Notes: generated from the letters alone by a model not told the origin. Numbered from the whole stretch's first letter, positions 51,615 to 62,827 are shown. The stretch is DNA of 63,938 bases, filler included, from Octopus bimaculoides (GCF_001194135.2; 6 parts of 5 records of this genome joined end to end with filler, not necessarily neighbours in it); one strand, 5' to 3'. Numbers and translations: made by a program.

Positions 51615-54055
51615 NNNNNNNNNNNNNNNNNNNNNNNNNNNNNNNNNNNNNNNNNNNNNNNNNNNNNNNNNNNNNNNNNNNNNNNNNNNNNNNNNNNNNN
51701 NNNNNNNNNNNNNNNNNNNNNNNNNNNNNNNNNNNNNNNNNNNNNNNNNNNNNNNNNNNNNNNNNNNNNNNNNNNNNNNNNNNNNNNNNNNNNNNNNNNN
51801 NNNNNNNNNNNNNNNNNNNNNNNNNNNNNNNNNNNNNNNNNNNNNNNNNNNNNNNNNNNNNNNNNNNNNNNNNNNNNNNNNNNNNNNNNNNNNNNNATAT
51901 ATATATATATATATATACACATATATATATATGAGCATGTTGAGTATTTATATGTGTTTTAACTTGTTCTTGTGATTGGTTGTGCACATGTATTCCGTAT
52001 GTGTATGTCTGTATATGTTATTCACCAAAGAAGCTGAACTCGAGATTCCGTATCCTGAAATAGTTTACGTCATGTCTGCATTGTTTTATGTTGATTGCAT
52101 GTGGAAATGGCGAATCGGCAGATTTTGGTCTCTTTTCAAACACAATCTCATTTCAACATTTGAAAGCAAATCTATTAAGACGTATCCTAGAGCACATATG
52201 ATTACTGGAACAAATCTAAATTCATGGGATAGTTAAAAGAACTCTATGCTTCTAATCATTTCACCATAAATGTTATTTTTCGTAATTTTTGTAGAGACAT
52301 TCAAAGTTGCTGTGCAACTGATATCTCCAAGAAGATTTTCTTCCTTTTCTGTACTGTATAACAATATTTCGCCTGCAATGCTTAAACCGGGTTACTGCTT
52401 TTATTATTACGCCCCATAAATATTTTTCTCAGTCGTGGTTATTCTGGCTCTGGTATGCCTGTAGCAAGGCCGTTCGTCCAATCTTTATTGCATATGGCAT
52501 TAAAATCGCCATAGTCACAATGTCGTATCTCATAGGAAGGCAGTGACTTGCAGAAAGTTTTGACACTTACTGATGAAGGGAACACTCCCTTCCTCACTGG
52601 TATAGTAAAGTGGGCAGTGTGCCTCATTAGGTTTTAGGGGATTCCTTAACTACTTTAAGCATTTCTGTGGCATGTGTTGGCATAATTTGTATTTCTTTTC
52701 TAATTCTCTGTTTAAGTAGATCACTTCATCCAATATTTCTTCAATTAGAACAGCTATAAAGCTGTAGTACTTGTTCAAGCGTTCTTCGTCTATTTTCAGG
52801 ATGATGCTACCAACAGTGTTGATTATTCATTTGCATTAGTTTCATTCTTTTCTTCTTAGGACGTGCTTTTAAAGTGATTACATGGGACATTCAATGACTT
52901 TAGGGACAGATTTTATGACTCCTCATTCAACACTTACTTTCATTGTCATAGTTGGTGTGAAATATAAGTCATTGTTTATAACGTACTAGTCCTGAAGTCT
53001 AAGCTACACATATTTTCAGCTGATCAGTTGAGTATCCAAAAAGTCGTCTGGTACTGGCACTGAAAAGACGTTTAGGATATCGTTTTATTGGATGAAAACA
53101 AATATTAAAACATTCATTCTAAAGTTTGCTAAAGTATTTTTTATCACTCTTAATCATGCAACATCCTCTTCGTTTCGAATTATTCACAATAATCGTCGTA
53201 CTTCGTAGAGAAGCAAGCGGAACATTGATAAACAGTATTCTTACCTCGTCGACTTTCTTCATTCGTTTTACTATAAAATATGAACTTGTTACCAAAATCA
53301 AATCCTGTTTCCCGTGAAAATATTGTGACCAGTTCTGTTTTCTTGGTAAAATGACTGTTATGCAAGTACAAATTAAATCACCTGGAAATAAGGTGTGGAT
53401 GTAAATCATCTTTATTTCATCATCAGCACCTAGCGTTTGAATTTCCTTGAAATGGATGACTAGCAGTAAGCAGTTGAGTTTCCTTTACATTTGACTTAAC
53501 CTTCCGTGAACGACTGAAAGTTATAGAGAGAACAAAAAGCAATACACATGAGCTGTTACCGTATGATAATCCTGTTCGCAGATCAAATCAGTTAATGGTG
53601 ATCTTCCGTTCTTCTCTCAATGGACCATGCTGTTGTCAGCTTTATAATGGCTGATAGCAGGCGGAACTTTGTAAGACTTGTTGACTCAAATATTCATGAG
53701 TGGTGAACAATGTCAAGTGACTACTTTGAAAATATACTCAGCAAGTTTCGACTGCAGTGTTTCGTTTCATTCAAGAGAGCATGAAATGTAGTTGATCAGC
53801 ATAGTCAAAGTTATCTTCTTTCGTCTTGTCCTTCAGTTATAATACTGTATGCTTAACATAGAGGAAAGTTTTCAGGAAAATATATCTGTGTACACANNNN
53901 NNNNNNNNNNNNNNNNNNNNNNNNNNNNNNNNNNNNNNNNTTAATTAATTAANNNNNNNNNNNNNNNNNNNNNNNNNNNNNNNNNNNNNNNNNNNNCTCT
54001 ACATTGTAATTTGTCCATTTTCTGTATTTAGCCCTGTGTGGCTATAATAAAAAGA

Positions 54056-54122
<67 letters not shown>

Positions 54123-54359
54123 TCTATTTATAGACGGCCATGGCACGCGTCTAATTGAAGATTCGCGAAACTTCAATGTGTGCGTGTGCGCGTGTTCGTA
54201 AAATTATTCCTCCCTGCTTGTGAAAGGAAAAATTATTCCTCCCTGCTCGTGAAATTGCCGAGAATCAAATTAATATTAAAAATGTCATGCATAGATCTTT
54301 GAATGGATCTGATGCAATTCTGTGGGAAAAGTCTAACGTAACGTCCACATTTATCCCAT

Positions 54360-54416
<57 letters not shown>

Positions 54417-54609
54417 CAAGCCAGTCATTATTTCAGTAATGCTGTTTTCAAAGTTGTCATTATTATCTTTCATAGGAATCGGTGAAGACTTCATCCATTA
54501 GAAATTGAATGCCTTATTTTTCTTTGAGAGCTCTATTTCTAAGTTGAAGTAATAGAGATCTAAGAACGAATCAGTTAGGTAGAGAATTAATCAGGCATGG
54601 TATACTTAC

Positions 54610-54776
54610 AAGTTCCGTGCACTCTGAAATACAGTCTCCCGCTAGAATGAAGCTGTTTTGATGTGGAGGGATCGCCATCTTGTTTGTATATTCCAATCCA
54701 ATTTCCATGACTCCAGAATCGTACTTCCTTCGTGTTGGAGTAACATAGAACCTTATTCCTGAAGTGTCTTTAACTC
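54610..54776 (-). CDS. DBH: DBH/TBH exon (G)VKDTSGIRFYVTPTRRKYDSGVMEIGLEYTNKMAIPPHQNSFILAGDCISECTEL
   Basis: ttacAG / GTaagt; 167 bp, phase 1-0. D.SGIR, G.ME.GLEY..KMAIPP and C...C motifs; length equals the equivalent human DBH exon as I recall it. Confidence 0.95.
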
Positions 54777-54818
54777 CTGTAATTAACGACATTAATATAA
54801 TGATAATTAAATACGAGA

Positions 54819-54896
54819 CAATTTCCATGGCTCCTAAATCATACTTTCTTAGTGTTTGGGTTACACAGAACCATATTCTTTAGATGTCTTTAGTAC
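54819..54896 (-). pseudogene. Decayed partial duplicate of the 5' 78 bp of the DBH 54776 exon (GTKDI*RIWFCVTQTLRKYDLGAMEI)
   Basis: Hand alignment gives 60/78 identical bases to 54776-54699 at an offset of 120 bp. It has its own AAG acceptor and an in-frame TAA. Confidence 0.85.
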
Positions 54897-55059
54897 CTTT
54901 GAATAGGAACAATAATTTAATCCTATGTGTATTACGTAATAACGCCTAGGAGAAAGGGAATGTAGCAAAAGAAATATCTTAGTTGCTAGTAATCCTTTAT
55001 TAGGGTAACAAACGCTGCAGAAAAGCTGAAATTCCAGGCACCTATTGCCGAGAATCAAT

Positions 55060-55312
55060 CCACAAAGCTCATATTTTGGACATATAATGCGTCATGAGTC
55101 ATTGCCCAAAATCATCCTGACACGAAGTTTGATGAAGAGAGCAAGAGGCCATCAAATACACTTGTAGACTGACGACATTAAAGAATAGACTGGAATCAAG
55201 AGCCTGGTTGATTTAATGCATACTGCACAACATCACAAATGGAACGGGAGAGTCTTGGCAAACCGACTCGCGGACACAAGCAGGACACTTAGCTGATGAT
55301 GGCTGATGATTT
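55060..55312 (+). mobile_element. RTE-clade LINE, 3' relic
   Basis: SYFGHIMRHESLPKII...KRARGHQ..*TDDIKE*TG, followed by a GAT-rich tail; typical of the RTE RT C-terminus. Confidence 0.75.
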
Positions 55313-56477
55313 ACCGAGAAAATGAAATGACTATCCAGCCTGGTAGACTTGAAAATAAAAACAACACAATGACAAATCTGTGTTATCAACACGCTTGTCT
55401 TACAATAATATCTAGAAAGCAAGCACAAACCAAGAAAGATTTCATGGAAACAGATTTGTGATGGCTCATTCATTTTACGATAACTTGCATACTTATTCTT
55501 ATTTCGTACCACCAGATTCGAAAGAGAATATGTTAATCGTTGTTGTGTTTGTCACAGGAGAACAACTTATTTACGACGTACATCTTCACAAGATACTCAA
55601 TTCACTAGTACAAGGTATTCTGGAACAATATGACGAAATACCGGAGTTCTAGAATCCGTTATGCTGAAGAATCGAGTATGTTATGAATATATGTTCATCA
55701 TAAAGGAAATGGTGATGTCCTGCCCTGTGGCGAACACCTATTAGCATATACACGTTGGAATCTGCTGAGAAACAGCTATCAGCATATACACGTTTGAATC
55801 TGTTGGAACATATTAAGAATAAATATGCAGGTCATCGATCGTTTTGAATCTTATAGTTCATATTTCTGTGCAAGACATCATGAATGTGATTAGCAGGTGC
55901 CCCAAAATGTCATCCATGAATTACTTCACTATGCGATACGATGTTTTCGCTAATACAATATATAGAATGAGCAACCTAGCTCGTTAAGAAAATCTCTGTT
56001 AAAGACGAAAGCAGTATTTATACTGAAAAGTAATGTTTATCGCCATCTAAACGTGGGCGTTCTATAAGAACAGACACTACTGCTATTTTAACTTCAGGAG
56101 AACAGCTCCTTCAGGTGGTTATTCAGCGCACTTCGCACTCGATATATATTGCAAACTGGAAGAGAAGTCCCTACTATTCTAGCTAGGAGACCACCAGATC
56201 ACGTGATTTCGACGTCATTTTGGTCATCGTCAGTGATGGATACTCGTCAGCTAGACATAGCGGTAGTTCACCCCAGCTTTCAATATAGAGAAAAACATAA
56301 CACACATATTTGAAAAAGTTTGTAGTGGGATACATATAAAAAAGTATGACGAGACCAGACTTGGAAATCGGTAGAATTTAGAGACGTTACCGAAACAAAC
56401 AACAAAAAGATCATCTTGAGGAACCAAGTAAATGTGTCTGTGTGTATTTGTGTGTGCACTGATTTGTAGAAACGTAC

Positions 56478-56577
56478 CGTGTTTTATTTCTGGATTATTA
56501 TAATGGACTTCCAGTAATATGTTGCGGGAGATGTTGCCTCCAATTGCACAGCCTGCCTCTGCTGGTAAATGTAAGGC
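56478..56577 (-). CDS. DBH: DBH/TBH exon ALHLPAEAGCAIGGNISRNILLEVHYNNPEIKH(G) (third CuH His)
   Basis: ttgcAG / GTacgt; 100 bp, phase 0-1. P.EAG..GG and LEVHY.NP motifs. Confidence 0.93.
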
Positions 56578-57027
56578 CTGCAATTTTAAATGAAAACGGT
56601 TTATATGAAAATTATAGAGGTAGGATTAGTAGTATTTCAGAGCAAAGGTATGTAAGAATACGTCAGTTGTTTTCAACCACATGGAGACATACATATACAT
56701 CTACACATATATTTTAGAGAATTTGCGTAGATTCACAAAATATGCTATATATATATATTCAAAAGAACACATACGCTCGGATATTTGTACAGAATCTATA
56801 CACATACAACTACACAAAATCACTACCAACGCACATACACATAGCAACATACATATGCATGCACGCATACACCCTACATATAGAACATACGTGCATTTGG
56901 ACACATACCCACAAATATACTCACACTCATGAAGCAGTTATTATAAAAGAATGTCTGGGGAAAACAGCCAAGGACTCCTGTTGCATGAAAACTTATGAGT
57001 GAATTAGCTGCCGGCATAATTGATGTA

Positions 57028-57502
57028 GTGGAGGCGCAATAGCCCAGTAGTTAGGACAGCGGATTCGCGGTCATAGGATCTCAGCTTCGATTCCCAGACC
57101 AGGCGTTGTGAGTGTTTATTGAGCGAAGACACCTAAAAAAGCTTCATGAGGCTCCGGCAGGGGATGGTGGTGAACCCTGCTGTACTCTTCCACCACAACT
57201 TTCTCTCACTTTTTCTTCCTATTTCTGTTGTGCCTGTAGTTCAAAGGGTCAGCCTTGTCACACTGTGTCATGCTGAATATCCCCGAGAACTACGTTAAGG
57301 GTACACGTGTCTGTGGNNNNNNNNNNGTAGTTCAAAGGGTCAGCCTTGTCACACTGTGTCATGCTGAATATCCCCGAGAACTACGTTAAGGGTACACGTG
57401 TCTGTGGAGTGCTCAGCCACTTGCACGTTAATTTCACGAGCAGGCTGTTCCGTTGATCGGATTAACTGGAACCCTCGTCGTCGTAAGCGACAGAGTGCCA
57501 AC
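57028..57502 (+). mobile_element. tRNA-like SINE family C with a 10-bp TSD
   Basis: Head GGAGGCGCAATAGCCCAGTAGTTAGG...TTCGATTCCC; TSD AATTGATGTA at 57018-57027 and 57503-57512. An internal segment is duplicated across the 10-N gap (assembly artefact). Confidence 0.88.
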
Positions 57503-59604
57503 AATTGATGTAACAAGACAAGAACTCTTACTCAAATATAATTACATTTTCAGAATTGAGAACGATTATTGATGGAAATATGTCCGGATTAGATCAAACT
57601 GTCAAAGATCAGACTCTCTCATCATTATTGTATATAGTAGTTGGTTTTGATAAGTTAAATTTTCAAAGTTGTCTTTCCCTGCCGTTTCTGATCAGACGTA
57701 GTCCTTAGATAATGATTGTTCTCTTATAGCTTTACCTTTTACATTTTTCATTTGTTCCTGTCATTGGTCTGCAGGCATGCTGGGATATCTCATTAAAGGA
57801 CATAGTGGAACAAATCGACAGCTAAGTTAAGAAGCCAAGAACAGCTAAATACCGGGGCCAAGAACAGCTAAATTACGGGGCCGTAAATAAACCATCACTG
57901 GTTTTCTAGCGAATGTTGGGAGTACAAGCATAATACAAACGCAAAGACACAAAGACATGGATATATACATATCTATGTTTCCGTCTACAAAATCTACTCA
58001 CAAGGCTTTGGGCGGTCAGGGCTAAAGTAGAAGATACTTGCTCAAGGTACCAGCATCTACACAACCGGGCCTGCACCTCTCAGAACAAGTAAAGTTTCTG
58101 TTAATTAAAATATCTTGATGTACTATATCGAGCTTGCTAGCTTGAACTTTGTAACGCATATAACCTGGTTACATTAAGAAGCCTCTTCACATTAACTGGA
58201 CATGTTGAAAATAGCAGTCAAATATCTTACAGAGTTCACCCTACGTCTTAAAAGTAAAAGCATCTATGAATATAATGACCATATTATTTCTGAATATATA
58301 TGTCGGAAAAAAATGGTCGCAGATTGAAGCCAGTTGAACGATGAAAGTTTGGTACACAGCAAGGATCAAAGAGTGACGCGTTACAGCACTCTACGAAACA
58401 GAAATCTGAAAATAAAAAATCTGTACGAAACAAACTCAGGAACATCTGAAGAAGTATTTTCTAAAATACTCACAGAGACACAGTCAAGCAACTACAACTT
58501 CTTATAAGGCATGCTATTTCACAAACTATAATAGCAACATCGACAACAATGTTGTTGCTATTTTAGTTTGCAAATCAGATATACTGCTATAACCTCCATT
58601 ATCAATTCCGTAGATTCGCACAAAATACTGAAAAGATATTGACCTTTCATACGAATATAGTTATACAAAAATGTCAGGTACATCTAGAACATTTTTTATG
58701 ATTGGTTCATTTGATCAGAGAAAGAAAGGACTAAACAACAACAATGACAACAACGACGACGATGACAGCAACGACAAAAACAACAACAATGACGACGATG
58801 ATTACAACAGCAACAATAACAAAATCAACAGCAATAGCAGTGACAGAATGAACACATATAGATCCAAATATATAGATTTACATTCTAACTACCACGTATC
58901 ATATTATGCGTAAATCGTGCACTGAAACTGGTTGAATTACTTCATTGAGACCCAAAGTACCAGTTACACACTAGGATCGATGTAATCGACTTAATCCCTT
59001 TTTCTGTCCTTGTTTGTCCCCTCTATGTTTAGCCCTCTGTGGGCAATAAAGAAATAAATATTATCAGGCGATGTAGGCGGCGAGCTGGCAGAATCGTTAG
59101 CACATCGGACAAAATGCTTAACGGTATTTCGCCCGTCGCTACGTTCTGAGTTCAAATTCCGCCGAGGTCGACTTGGTCTTTCATCTGTTCGGGGTCGGTA
59201 AATTAAGTACCAGTTGAACACTGGGGGTGACTTACCTATTCCCCGAAATTGCTGGCCTTGTGCCAAAATTTGAAACCAATATTATCACGCGAAGGTACAT
59301 GACTAGGGTGAGACACTTATTATCGTATGATTGTGGTTTTCATTCTGGAACCAAGTGGTACAGTGTGTTCATTTCACGTTACTCCAGGCCATTCAGCTGT
59401 TAAAGAGCAACCCCGAAACAGTCCTAGGTGAATGGTCTGATTTTAGTCATATACACCATGAAAACCGAATAAGCGATCTGATTAGTCTTAGGGCTCAAAA
59501 CAAAACATACCAAATATTTTATTACTATTTATTAATTTCTCAGGTCTGCTTGTGCCTGTAAATAAAAGGAAACTGAGCTGCAATAGATATGAAAAGCTAC
59601 TTAC

Positions 59605-59784
59605 AGAGGCACCCATAGCCCATGCTCCTATGACATGTCGACAAACACTAAGTTCCTTAGGTTTCTCCCCTACCAAACTTGGTCCGTTAAAGTAGGGTAT
59701 TTTCATTCCGTGTTTCCACTCACAGAGGAACACTTCGATGTGATGAACGAAATTCTCATTACCTTTTGTTATGGCGCTTTCAAA
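59605..59784 (-). CDS. DBH: DBH/TBH exon FESAITKGNENFVHHIEVFLC...CRHVIGAWAMGAS (CuH His-His)
   Basis: tttcAG / GTaagt; 180 bp, phase 0-0. VHHIEVF and CRHVIGAWAMGA match DBH VHHMEVF / CRHVLAAWALGA rather than MOXD1 HHILLY. Confidence 0.95.
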
Positions 59785-60240
59785 CTGAAAATATATAAAA
59801 GAGTCGCATCTATAGGTTTGAACACTCATATATATGTTGTATATATGTAAAATATATAATATTTATACTATGAGAATATATAATATAACATAATATAATG
59901 TGTATATGTTTACATATATTATTTATAATGCAATATAGTATAATATAATATAAGACAATATATATNNNNNNNNNNNNNNNNNNNNNNNNNNNNNNNNNNN
60001 NNNNNNNNNNNNNNNNNNNNNNNNNNNNNNNNNNNNNNNNNNNNNNNNNNNNNNNNNNNNNNNNNNNNNNNNNNNNNNNNNNNNNNNNNNNNNNNNNNNN
60101 NNNNNNNNNNNNNNNNNNNNNNNNNNNNNNNNNNNNNNNNNNNNNNNNNNNNNNNNNNNNNNNNNNNNNNNNNCTTGTTTGTCCCCTCTCTGTTTAGCTC
60201 CTTGTGGGCAATAAAGAAATAAATAAGAAATATATATGTA

Positions 60241-60493
60241 TGGCGGCGAGCTGGCAGAAACGTTAGCACGCTGGGCGAAAAGCTTAGCTGTATTTCGTCT
60301 GCCGTTACGTTCTGAGTTCAAATTCCGCCGTGGTCGACTTTTCCTTTCATCCTTTCGGGGTCGATAAATTAAGTACCAGTTACGCACTGGGGTCGATGTA
60401 ATCGACTTAATCCGTTTGTTTGTCCTTGTTTGTCCCCTCTCTGTTTAGCTCCTTGTGGGCAATAAAGAAATAAATAAGAAATATATATGTATG
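60241..60493 (+). mobile_element. tRNA-like SINE family B (GGCGGCGAGCTGGCAGAA head)
   Basis: B-box-like GAGTTCAAATTCC; body GGGGTCGATAAATTAAGTACCAG. Other copies at about 13300-13500, 15500-15820, 31235-31440(-), 33575-33780(-), 34465-34680, 37814-37980, 39410-39612(-) and 59078-59280. Confidence 0.85.
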
Positions 60494-61630
60494 GTTACAT
60501 ACGTGCGTGTATATTTATGCGTGTGTGTGTGTGTGTGTGTGTGTGCGTGTATAAAATGATCATATGAAAGCACCATAGATCAGTAGATAACTAGTACAAC
60601 GTAAGTTTGGTTAAAGACTAGGTCTCTATTATCGTTTGGAAAACTTTTCATTTCCCTTGTGTTGCTAATAAATTCTCTTTAAAAAATCTTTAGTGCTGTA
60701 ACGTTTACTTTACTCACCAATAAATGCTAGCAGCTGTTTTAAACATTCCTATGAAGTTAGAGAGAAATCATGTTAATGTTTCCTCCTGGGAAATATACTA
60801 TCTGTCAAAAATATAAGCTATATCAATGTGTTGAGCTTTATAGACCTATGAACCATGACAGAATCAGAGAAAAGTAATATGGATAAATTAAGGTCGTTTG
60901 AAGCTCAGAGAGAAAGAGAAAGAAAGAAACATAGAGAAGGAGAGGGAGAGAGAGAGAGAGAGCAATTGATGACAGGTGTCAATACAGTTCACTCTTAAAA
61001 CTTTTTGACAATGGAAAGTGAAATGGAACACTATCATGTTATTGAGAATGAAAAAATCTTTTGAAAGCGGTTGATTTTGAAGATATGAAAATATTATCAT
61101 ATCGTATCATAAATTTCTGAGTAGAATTATATCATTTATTCTCAAGGAACCATTGTTTCATTCAAATATGCTCCCCAAATTCCAATTAATCTAACACCTG
61201 AGTTGCTCTAACTTAGCCTTATGCGAAGTTATTTTCTGTAACTACAAGAAACTTTATTTGCCATATTTCTTCAAATATCTGTAAAAAATAGGTTTAATTT
61301 CAATCACCTGGGAAAAGGAATTTATAAGATCAAAACTAGGCGCACAATTTTACGAAGTCTCTAACTTATGGAAAAGAACTAAAGGCGACATTTGACGCTT
61401 GCACACATTTCAGTGACATAAGAAATTCTTGTTAAGCTGGCCTACAAGGGAAAAGAAACTATCAAACGATGTTTGTCGTACACTGTGCAATAATCACTTA
61501 ATACGCCAGAATCAATAAATTATTTCATAGGCACTTTTATATATGAATTAGAAATATTTTATGGAATGCTGATCAGAAGTTTAAGAAGGTGGCATTTAAA
61601 GAGAAAGCAACTTTAAAGAGAAAGCAATAC

Positions 61631-61714
61631 CTGAATTATATGCTGTCGCTCGGGAAGAGCTGGAAGTTTTGTTGTGTACCACCAGTATGTCGTTTCTTTT
61701 GCTGGTATTGTAAC
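61631..61714 (-). CDS. DBH: Dopamine/tyramine beta-hydroxylase (copper type II monooxygenase), internal exon VTIPAKETTYWWYTTKLPALPERQHIIQ
   Basis: Acceptor tttgccAG and donor GTattg; 84 bp, phase 0-0. Matches the DBH motif ETTYWC...HHII and splices in frame to the 59784 exon. Confidence 0.85.
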
Positions 61715-61939
61715 CTGGCAAATAAAAAAAAAATCGACCTATCAAAGATTGCCGTTGAAATATACACTTAATTTAAAACATTATAGAGGTATATAAATAC
61801 AAAGTGCTTTCCAGAGGTTTTGAGAATTTTCAGGAGATACATTTATTAAATTTAAAGAGGTAAAAATCTCTAAACACTTTCAAAGTAGGATCCTCTGACT
61901 TCAACTCACTTCTAGCGCTGCAGCCACTTATGAAAGCCT

Positions 61940-62095
61940 TCTGTGAGTGGAACAGTAAAAATATGCAGGACTTTTCTCAAGTTCCAAATGTGAATTTGTC
62001 TATGTTAACTACATCCCAAAGATGGAACCTTGTATCTTTGTTGGAAACCGGCTCCCTCAGTGGAAGATTTATAATAATTAAAAAATAGAAGACAT
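61940..62095 (+). mobile_element. Short 5'-truncated second copy of the same R4-like element
   Basis: SVSGTVKICRTFLKFQM* plus a 3'UTR that aligns by eye with about 19855-20015. Confidence 0.8.
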
Positions 62096-62827
62096 ACATG
62101 CATATATAGTGTAATGTCCTAAGTGAGATTTTAAGCTGCATCTCTTAATGGGGTCCTGGTTCGGAAGAGACAGGTTTTTGAGGAATGTAGAACAACAATC
62201 TGCCCAGGAATAGTAGCAACTTTTGGCATACCAATTAGGGGTTGATTGGTATGTCCCGGAATTGCTTCTGGAAGAAGGTTACTCGTTGACACTCAACGGG
62301 CTCGGGAGTGTTAAAGCCCTTCAGCTTGTGAAAGGGAAGATATGTCGGAAACTAAGGGCTCATGGCACATGTTGCAGTAGACGAAAGCAAGTTTGAAGAA
62401 CGAGAAAGTGGGACTGGGTCTGCATAAACCTTGTCCGCTGTAGTATTAATCCTGCAAGTTTTACAACAAACTGGAACATCAGCGCCAATACCAACACTGT
62501 CAAATTTTCTTCATAAGTTAGTAGTGATAGGTAAAGAGGTACGGAACAGGTAGAGAACGCTACTGGACGTCTTCAGTTTTGATCCTACATACGAGCTGTC
62601 TTATGTTGACGACTATGTCTAGTTGTGTCTTGATGAACAAACATTTACTGAAGCAACAAGGGTGTCCACCACCTGCAAGTTCTTCTTTTGTTCTTTTACT
62701 TGTTTATTCGTTTATTTGTTATATATANNNNNNNNNNNNNNNNNNNNNNNNNNNNNNNNNNNNNNNNNNNNTTAATTAATTAANNNNNNNNNNNNNNNNN
62801 NNNNNNNNNNNNNNNNNNNNNNNNNNN

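What the first reader, a model, noticed from the sequence alone, without database searches (positions are those of the whole stretch)
59605..61714. DBH/TBH has lost both cysteines of one conserved disulfide
Seen: ETTYWW (TGG) where DBH and TBH have ETTYWC, and FNGPSL (AGT) where human DBH has FSGPCD. Each codon is one base from a Cys codon. Known: these positions form the Cys232-Cys283 bond in human DBH, beside active-site Tyr230. Equivalents of Cys269/295, Cys390/394, the CuH histidines and Glu265 are retained. Inference: a paired loss under selection rather than decay, possibly altering substrate preference (dopamine versus tyramine, the octopamine precursor).
Basis: partly seen in the sequence, partly recalled or inferred. 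Interest (0 to 1): 0.7.

Follow-up and report, generated by a model that had tools for sequence, protein, structure and literature searches.

The report
Mollusc DBH lacks one disulfide
The gene really does lack both cysteines of one conserved disulfide, but oysters, clams, sea slugs and limpets lack them too, so this is an old trait of mollusc dopamine/tyramine beta-hydroxylase and not a novelty of this animal.

Summary
Four minus-strand exons of a DBH/TBH-type copper monooxygenase lie in the piece. Aligned to human DBH (PDB 4ZEL), Cys232 is Trp (TGG, 61679-61681) and Cys283 is Ser (AGT, 59677-59679). The equivalents of Cys269, Cys295, Cys390, Cys394, His262, His263, His333, Glu265 and His297 are kept. 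The N gap (59966-60173) lies inside the intron between exons A and B, and no coding residues are missing.

The closest relatives are the DBH-like proteins of Ostrea, Ruditapes, Elysia, Aplysia and Patella. These five carry Trp at the first site, with Gly (Patella: Lys) at the second. Fragments from Mya, Batillaria and Elysia marginata, where only the second site is visible, also show Gly. The loss therefore predates the split of bivalves, gastropods and this lineage.

Across 133 family domains the two cysteines are present together or absent together (120 versus 11; none has only the first). The pair was lost independently at least four times in the DBH/TBH clade: molluscs, one copy of a centipede tandem duplicate, a tunicate and a horsehair worm.

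The Ser most likely arose from the mollusc Gly (GGT to AGT), not directly from Cys. Nothing here supports a change in substrate preference. The gene is an ordinary, intact orthologue, and the interest is modest.

The parts
61631..61714 (-). Exon A (28 codons, phase 0): VTIPAKETTYWWYTTKLPALPERQHIIQ. It forms strand beta2 of the CuH domain.
   Evidence: Translation, tblastn, AG/GT borders read. Locus L002 has the same borders.
61679..61681 (-). TGG codon, Trp at the position of human DBH Cys232.
   Evidence: Alignment to 4zel_A and sequence. Five named mollusc DBH-like proteins and loci L002 and L003 also have Trp here.
59785..61630 (-). Intron A/B. It holds the assembly gap 59966-60173 and SINE-like repeat copies.
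   Evidence: Exons A and B abut with no missing residues against human and mollusc proteins. Repeats.
59605..59784 (-). Exon B (60 codons). It carries the CuH ligands HH (His262/263 equivalents), Glu265, Cys269, Cys295 and His297 equivalents, and the FNGPSL site.
59677..59679 (-). AGT codon, Ser at the position of human DBH Cys283. Mollusc relatives have Gly here, with codon GGT in L002.
56478..56577 (-). Exon C (33 codons plus 1 nt): ALHLPAEAGCAIGGNISRNILLEVHYNNPEIKH. It holds the His333 equivalent and an extra lineage-specific Cys (TGT 56548-56550).
54610..54776 (-). Exon D (completes 56 codons): GVKDTSGIRFYV...GDCISECTEL. It covers the end of the CuH domain and the start of the CuM domain, with Cys390/Cys394 equivalents.
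   Evidence: Orthologous exon in L001.

Best explanation
The piece carries four exons of the animal's orthologue of dopamine/tyramine beta-hydroxylase, the copper- and ascorbate-dependent enzyme that makes noradrenaline and octopamine. Like the other mollusc orthologues examined, it lacks the structural disulfide that ties strands beta2 and beta5 of the CuH domain (human Cys232-Cys283).

The pair was lost once, before bivalves, gastropods and this lineage diverged. The first cysteine became Trp. The second became Gly, which later changed to Ser in this lineage (GGT to AGT).

The two cysteines are always lost together, because an unpaired cysteine in a secreted, oxidatively folded protein is selected against.

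My inference for the mechanism is that the covalent link is replaced by packing: a bulky indole sits against a small partner residue (Gly or Ser). The beta-sandwich fold and the copper site would then be kept and the enzyme would still work as the beta-hydroxylase.

Shown: residue identities, exon structure, distribution across taxa, coupling of the two sites, independent recurrences, and a confident predicted fold.

Inferred: the packing mechanism, that the enzyme is active, and that this gene is the one used as the tbh/DBH marker in cephalopod brain studies.
For: Family and residues.
- Pfam Cu2_monooxygen scores 120 bits against a cutoff of 30, and the start of Cu2_monoox_C is also hit.
- The best solved relative is human DBH 4ZEL, E 1e-53, with all checked catalytic residues and other cysteines aligned.
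- C232-C283 links beta2 and beta5 of the CuH domain (PMC4846438).

Distribution.
- The top hits of the exhaustive search are about 60% identical and carry TTYWW plus NGPG.
- Their source names are Ostrea edulis, Ruditapes philippinarum, Elysia chlorotica and Aplysia californica (Trp/Gly), Patella vulgata (Trp/Lys) and Mya arenaria (first site not visible, Gly).
- Batillaria, Elysia marginata and about ten unnamed exon-B fragments also have GPG.
- Genomic loci L002 and L003 have Trp/Gly (L002 shares the window's exon borders).
- Both cysteines are present in Priapulus, sea urchin, a trematode, rotifers, nematodes, an insect, spiders and sequences that look vertebrate.

Coupling of the two sites: 120 domains have both cysteines, 11 have neither and 0 have only the first (Fisher p 2e-14).

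Tree with the two focal columns masked.
- The window groups with the molluscs (bootstrap 80%).
- Strigamia copy 1 (Trp/Gly) groups with its own tandem copy 2 (Cys/Cys) (100%).
- The two Styela paralogues group together (99%).
- A grouping of molluscs with Strigamia copy 1 has 0% support.

Fold and constraint.
- The AlphaFold2 model has mean pLDDT 88. W12 lies in strand 8-16 and S64 in strand 61-64, and the best PDB match is 4zel_A with TM 0.73.
- Exon D is 92% identical to a related species against 82-87% for its introns, with pN/pS 0.43.

Literature: one DBH per bivalve genome, a single TBH/DBH gene in Lymnaea, and DBH and TBH reported as one orthogroup.
Against: - Only four exons are in the piece. 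The CuM ligands, the DOMON domain, the partners of Cys390 and Cys394, and the reading frame of the rest of the gene could not be checked.
- No reads or transcripts of this animal were available.
- No other named cephalopod, and no annelid, brachiopod or chiton, could be identified. "All molluscs" therefore means three bivalves and five gastropod species plus the window.
- Bootstrap support for the mollusc grouping is 80%, on 175 columns with a simple distance method.
- The Trp-packing mechanism is inferred. The tool gives no coordinates, so no residue contact was measured.
- The selection estimate rests on 56 codons.
- The extra Cys in exon C is unexplained.
Confidence: 0.8

Rival explanations
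1. One reading: a recent, lineage-specific paired loss in this animal, selected because it shifts substrate preference between dopamine and tyramine.
For: Both sites differ from human DBH and arthropod TBH. Ser at the second site is specific to the window among the molluscs seen.
Against: Trp at site 1 and a non-Cys residue at site 2 occur in the named bivalves and gastropods wherever those sites are visible. Those lineages are reported to have one DBH/TBH gene. The same paired loss recurs in a centipede duplicate, a tunicate and a nematomorph, with no known link to substrate. No substrate data exist.
Confidence: 0.06
2. An ancient duplication produced a Trp-type and a Cys-type DBH in early protostomes or bilaterians. 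Molluscs kept the Trp-type, and the centipede and tunicate Trp copies are the same old paralogue.
For: The same residues (Trp/Gly or Trp/Ser) appear in molluscs, Strigamia copy 1 and Styela.
Against: With the focal columns masked, Strigamia copy 1 groups with its own Cys/Cys tandem neighbour in 100% of bootstraps. The Styela pair groups together in 99%. Molluscs plus Strigamia copy 1, and molluscs plus Styela, each group in 0%. The DOMON regions of the two Strigamia copies are nearly identical. Cys to Trp and Cys to Gly are single-base changes, so recurrence is easy.
Confidence: 0.05
3. Decaying pseudogene or untranscribed copy; a canonical paralogue elsewhere in the genome does the work.
For: Only part of the gene is visible and no transcripts were available. 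A degenerate partial copy of exon D sits in the adjacent intron.
Against: All four exons are open with canonical splice sites. All checked copper ligands and other cysteines are kept. Exon D is more conserved than its introns against a related species. The Trp/small-residue state is the normal state of mollusc orthologues.
Confidence: 0.04
4. Assembly or base-calling error at one or both codons.
For: The assembly is of draft quality here: two N gaps, and one is flanked by an exact 81-nt duplication.
Against: Two separate codons in two exons are both changed. Trp at site 1 matches the mollusc relatives in which that site is visible, and a non-Cys residue at site 2 matches them too. Neither codon is near a gap.
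Confidence: 0.02

Closest known systems
Mollusc 'dopamine beta-hydroxylase-like' proteins: Ostrea edulis XP_056011248.1, Ruditapes philippinarum XP_060594958.1, Aplysia californica XP_035825847.1, Elysia chlorotica RUS80448.1, Patella vulgata XP_050394406.1
   Same: They are 52-62% identical over the 177 residues. They share the TTYWW motif with Trp in place of Cys232 and have no cysteine at the Cys283 position. The other cysteines and the CuH ligands match. They group with the window in the tree at 80% bootstrap.
   Different: The window has Ser (AGT) where they have Gly (Patella: Lys). The window has an extra Cys in AEAGCAIGG, and Asp instead of Tyr before the Cys390 equivalent.
Human dopamine beta-hydroxylase (PDB 4ZEL)
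   Same: Same fold (TM 0.73 to the model). Identity is 50% over the structural alignment to 4zel_A. The His262/His263/His333 copper site, Glu265, His297, the Cys269-Cys295 pair, and Cys390 and Cys394 all have equivalents.
   Different: Human DBH has the Cys232-Cys283 disulfide between beta2 and beta5. The window has Trp and Ser there.
Ecdysozoan TBH and other invertebrate DBH/TBH-clade proteins with both cysteines (Timema TBH, spider TBH, Priapulus, rotifer, nematode, trematode and sea urchin proteins)
   Same: Same orthogroup. DBH and TBH are reported as 1:1 orthologues (PMC10244343). They are 45-58% identical to the window.
   Different: All retain both cysteines.
Independent disulfide-less members: Strigamia maritima T1IHN5 copy 1 (Trp/Gly), Styela clava XP_039267528.1 (Trp/Ser) and XP_077972661.1 (Ser/Ser), Gordionus XP_065314626.1 (Lys/Ser)
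   Same: The same pair of cysteines is lost together, and Trp often takes the first site.
   Different: They are not specially related to the mollusc genes. Each groups with Cys/Cys relatives of its own lineage.
Peptidylglycine alpha-hydroxylating monooxygenase (PHM)
   Same: Same two-domain copper monooxygenase fold (E 3e-5 by sequence, TM about 0.5). The aligned PHM sequence has a cysteine at the Cys232 column.
   Different: A distant paralogue with a peptide substrate and no DOMON domain. It is not the family of this gene.

Membership tests
Copper type II ascorbate-dependent monooxygenase, DBH/TBH clade | Cu2_monooxygen (PF01082) N-terminal catalytic domain | tested here: met
   120.2 bits against a cutoff of 30, covering profile positions 8-128 of 130.
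Copper type II ascorbate-dependent monooxygenase, DBH/TBH clade | Three CuH histidines (human His262, His263, His333) | tested here: met
   H42, H43 and H113 align to them in 4zel_A.
Copper type II ascorbate-dependent monooxygenase, DBH/TBH clade | CuM ligands (two His and one Met) in the C-terminal domain | not testable with these tools
   The piece ends 37 positions into PF03712. The exons that carry these ligands lie outside the piece.
Copper type II ascorbate-dependent monooxygenase, DBH/TBH clade | N-terminal DOMON domain | not testable with these tools
   No DOMON-coding exon was found in 61715-62727. It lies upstream of the piece.
Copper type II ascorbate-dependent monooxygenase, DBH/TBH clade | Groups with DBH/TBH and not with MOXD-like proteins | tested here: met
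   The nearest neighbours are DBH/TBH-named proteins. MOXD-like and tandem two-domain proteins are 33-37% identical and fall in a separate part of the tree.
Copper type II ascorbate-dependent monooxygenase, DBH/TBH clade | Conserved CuH-domain disulfide Cys232-Cys283 | tested here: not met
   Trp and Ser occupy these positions. This is typical of the family but not defining: 11 of 133 family domains lack the pair, including the named mollusc orthologues in which both sites are visible.
Copper type II ascorbate-dependent monooxygenase, DBH/TBH clade | Second CuH-domain disulfide Cys269-Cys295 | tested here: met
   C49 and C76 align to them. Bond formation itself was not tested.
Copper type II ascorbate-dependent monooxygenase, DBH/TBH clade | Beta-hydroxylation of tyramine or dopamine | not testable with these tools
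   This needs an enzyme assay.
Mollusc DBH orthogroup (Trp-type, without the disulfide) | TTYWW motif, no cysteine between the Cys269 and Cys295 equivalents, and a shared exon structure | tested here: met
   The exon A and exon B borders are identical to those of locus L002.
Mollusc DBH orthogroup (Trp-type, without the disulfide) | Gly at the Cys283 position (GPG motif) | tested here: not met
   The window has GPS (AGT). Patella also deviates, with Lys. This is a one-step change from the GGT seen in L002.

The most novel reading that the evidence does not exclude
The repeated, independent replacement of this disulfide by Trp plus a small residue (in molluscs, a centipede duplicate and a tunicate) might be more than a neutral swap. 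It could be a convergent adaptive switch that changes how the CuH domain behaves, for example its flexibility relative to CuM, its substrate preference, or its tolerance of the reducing, ascorbate-rich vesicle lumen. The window's further Gly-to-Ser change and its new Cys in exon C could be a lineage-specific refinement of that switch.
Probability: 0.1. Interest if true: 0.5.

Novelty: new member of a known kind. Interest (0 to 1): 0.3.

Why it matters
The finding corrects a tempting story. The missing disulfide is not an innovation tied to this animal's neurochemistry. It is the normal state of mollusc DBH.

The broader pattern is a small but clean case study. A disulfide that most of the family shares, and whose first cysteine also aligns in PHM, is dispensable. 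It is always lost as a pair, and it has been replaced several times independently by the same Trp-plus-small-residue solution.

That could guide engineering of DBH or PHM variants that fold without this bond. It also cautions against reading function into cysteine differences seen when only human and insect sequences are compared.

The search terms I tried found no paper that describes this.

Tried and rejected
- The word-indexed protein search with the single 177-residue query gave only 2 hits. With a mollusc profile it gave 81 hits, all 311 residues or shorter. It did not return the full-length mollusc proteins, not even the ones the query alignment was built from. It could therefore not be used to look for cephalopod or annelid full-length proteins. 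The third search was not spent.\n- An exact look-up of the exon-B ORF of the window found nothing on record. No independent contigs of the same species were obtained.\n- The first attempt to tabulate the two columns used the wrong match columns and was redone with the RF line.\n- The alignment of all 150 sequences was too large to be copied out, so it was redone in batches.\n- Literature searches for a description of missing cysteines in invertebrate TBH/DBH, and for the sample accessions SRR11869391, ERZ21867824 and ERZ25084522, returned nothing. A search for recombinant oyster DBH returned nothing useful.\n- ARAGORN found no tRNA in the SINE-like repeats.\n- Structure prediction returns no coordinates, so the Trp-Ser contact could not be measured.\n- Considered and rejected: a mutually exclusive second exon A carrying Cys. 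tblastn finds only one exon A in the piece.

Full report
**What is in the piece.**
The region 53997-62727 carries four exons of one gene on the minus strand.
- Exon A, 61714..61631: VTIPAKETTYWWYTTKLPALPERQHIIQ.
- Exon B, 59784..59605: FESAITKGNENFVHHIEVFLCEWKHGMKIPYFNGPSLVGEKPKELSVCRHVIGAWAMGAS.
- Exon C, 56577..56478: ALHLPAEAGCAIGGNISRNILLEVHYNNPEIKH, plus one base.
- Exon D, 54776..54610: GVKDTSGIRFYV...GDCISECTEL.

All four have AG acceptors and GT donors. tblastn with full-length mollusc and Priapulus proteins finds no other exon in the piece. The joined 177 residues hit Pfam Cu2_monooxygen at 120 bits (cutoff 30) and the first 37 positions of Cu2_monoox_C. The best solved relative is human dopamine beta-hydroxylase 4ZEL (E 1e-53), with PHM far behind (E 3e-5).

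**The assembly gap.**
The N run 59966-60173 lies in the intron between exons A and B. Exon A ends ...RQHIIQ and exon B begins FESAITKGNE. These align without a missing residue to human ...HHIIK|YEPIVTKGNE and to mollusc proteins. An independent genomic locus (L002) has the same exon borders. The gap therefore hides no coding sequence. It sits among SINE-like repeats. The 70 bases right after it are identical to a copy 251 bases further on, so its stated length is unreliable but does not matter here.

**The observation.**
In the 4zel_A alignment the chain index plus 39 gives the residue number.
- W12 (TGG, 61681-61679) falls on Cys232.
- S64 (AGT, 59679-59677) falls on Cys283.
- The same offset places C49 on Cys269, C76 on Cys295, C170 on Cys390, C174 on Cys394, H42/H43 on His262/263, H113 on His333, E45 on Glu265 and H78 on His297.

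The 4ZEL paper states that C232-C283 holds strands beta2 and beta5 of the CuH domain together. It also gives C269-C295, C390-C503 and C394-C565 (PMC4846438; also PMC3197665). The only slip is that Cys390 and Cys394 are not partners of each other. Their partners lie outside the piece.

**Relatives.**
The exhaustive HMMER search of 1.84 billion cluster representatives gave 2260 hits. The closest full-length proteins are about 60% identical, and all carry TTYWW and NGPG. That is Trp for the first cysteine and Gly for the second. Their sources name them as follows.

| Source | Accession | Site 1 / site 2 |
|---|---|---|
| Ostrea edulis | XP_056011248.1 | Trp / Gly |
| Ruditapes philippinarum | XP_060594958.1 | Trp / Gly |
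| Elysia chlorotica | RUS80448.1 | Trp / Gly |
| Aplysia californica | XP_035825847.1 | Trp / Gly |
| Patella vulgata | XP_050394406.1 | Trp / Lys |
| Mya arenaria | WAR30866.1 | not visible / Gly |

A profile search added more exon-B fragments with GPG: Batillaria attramentaria, Elysia marginata and about ten unnamed ones.

Two unnamed ENA genome contigs were fetched.
- L002 encodes VTIPSKETTYWWYTTKLPPMSDKHHIIQ and ...YYNGPGLAEGKP. It is the closest relative of the window's exons A and B (75% and 67%). Its borders match the window's, and its Gly codon is GGT.
- L003 is also Trp/Gly.

Both cysteines are present in Priapulus, Strongylocentrotus, a trematode, rotifers, nematodes, an insect TBH, spiders and sequences that look vertebrate.

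**Coupling of the two sites.**
I scored 133 aligned family domains for Cys at the first site and for any Cys between the Cys269 and Cys295 equivalents. Of these, 120 have both, 11 have neither and none has only the first. Two apparent cases with only the second cysteine are alignment artefacts: one has a truncated N-terminus and one has its first cysteine shifted by a residue. Fisher's test gives p 2e-14. This is what a disulfide pair should show.

**How many times the pair was lost.**
I built a neighbour-joining tree with the two focal columns masked.
- The window groups with the mollusc proteins (80% of 200 bootstraps).
- The Trp/Gly copy of the Strigamia maritima tandem fusion T1IHN5 groups with its own Cys/Cys neighbour (100%).
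- The two Styela clava paralogues (Trp/Ser and Ser/Ser) group together (99%).
- Molluscs never group with Strigamia copy 1 or with Styela (0%).
- With Gordionus (Lys/Ser), that makes at least four independent paired losses in the DBH/TBH clade.
- Three more cases appear among MOXD-like proteins (P0083, P0108, P0131).
- Trp at the first site arose at least three times. Cys to Trp and Cys to Gly are single-base changes.

**Timing and the Ser codon.**
Bivalves, several gastropod lineages and the window share Trp at site 1 and a non-Cys residue at site 2. The loss therefore predates their divergence. Gly is the common mollusc state and L002 uses GGT. The window's AGT is thus most simply a later Gly-to-Ser step and not a direct change from Cys, although AGT is also one step from TGT. 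I could not name any other cephalopod, chiton, annelid or brachiopod sequence. I therefore cannot say whether the loss is older than molluscs, or where within the window's lineage the Ser arose.

**Is the gene alive?**
- The exons are open and the catalytic residues are kept.
- A 1584-bp Logan contig from a related species (L001, SRR11869391) aligns across exon D and its introns. Identity is 92% in the exon against 82% upstream and 87% downstream, with pN/pS about 0.43 over 56 codons.
- AlphaFold2 with a 50-sequence alignment gives mean pLDDT 88. Blocks covering residues 1-140 score 84-97. W12 lies in strand 8-16 and S64 in strand 61-64, and the best PDB match is 4zel_A at TM 0.73.
- Published work reports one DBH per bivalve genome plus several MOXD1-like genes (bioRxiv 10.64898/2026.08.17.745212). 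It reports a single TBH/DBH gene in Lymnaea whose mRNA co-labels octopamine cells (PMC13281674).
- It also reports tbh/DBH expression in octopus optic-lobe and peduncle neurons.
- DBH and TBH are reported as 1:1 orthologues (PMC10244343).
- I could not verify that the window gene is the marker gene of those octopus studies. No tool named the window's organism.

**Mechanism.**
- Shown: the covalent beta2-beta5 link cannot form, while the rest of the CuH domain is intact and is predicted to fold as in DBH.
- Inferred: a large indole packing against a small residue (Gly or Ser) replaces the bond. The recurrence of the same Trp-plus-small-residue pair in unrelated lineages fits a structural compensation that is also mutationally easy.
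- Nothing links the change to substrate choice.

**Verdict.**
This is an ordinary member of the mollusc DBH orthogroup. The family-wide pattern of coupled, convergent loss of the disulfide is a modest point of interest.

Noticed in passing
window 54819-54892 (minus strand): A 74-nt copy of the first 74 nt of exon D (about 78% identical) lies 43 nt upstream of the real acceptor. It has an in-frame stop and no AG, so it is a dead partial exon duplication. The related-species contig L001 has it too, at intron-like identity (80%), so it predates that split.
   Followed up: partly
window 56548-56550 (minus strand, exon C): An extra cysteine (TGT) occurs in AEAGCAIGG, at the position of human DBH Leu317. 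The aligned mollusc orthologues have Thr, Val, Phe or Ser there (L003: Ile). Whether it is free or has a partner in the unseen exons is unknown.
   Followed up: no
window 57236-57407: A 10-N gap (57317-57326) is flanked by two 100% identical 81-nt copies. This looks like an assembly artefact: the same sequence placed on both sides of a gap.
   Followed up: partly
window 58955-59226 and 60174-60494: Two copies of a SINE-like interspersed repeat lie in intron A/B. The 70 nt immediately after the large N gap are identical to 60425-60494. ARAGORN calls no tRNA in them. A third tRNA-like stretch lies around 57035-57110.
   Followed up: partly
window 54057-54120, 54360-54405, 58733-58850: Simple repeats: (ATCT)n, (CA)n followed by (TA)n, and a 9-nt-period AAC/GAC-rich array that reads as an Asn/Asp-rich ORF (58671-58913, plus strand). 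That ORF is probably not a gene.
   Followed up: no
P0003 (Strigamia maritima T1IHN5, 1139 aa): This gene model fuses two tandem DBH copies. Copy 1 has lost the disulfide (Trp/Gly) and copy 2 keeps it. It is a recent natural experiment for the same substitution pair.
   Followed up: partly
window 54631-54633 (minus strand, exon D): Asp replaces the Tyr that precedes the Cys390 equivalent (GDCISECT against GYC in nearly all relatives). The related-species contig L001 shares the Asp, and Priapulus also has GDC.
   Followed up: no
Homologous-protein output: The word-indexed search returned only proteins of 311 residues or fewer. It missed full-length proteins that the cluster look-up shows are in the collection, including sequences used to build the query profile. 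This matters when interpreting 'no hit' from that tool.
   Followed up: no
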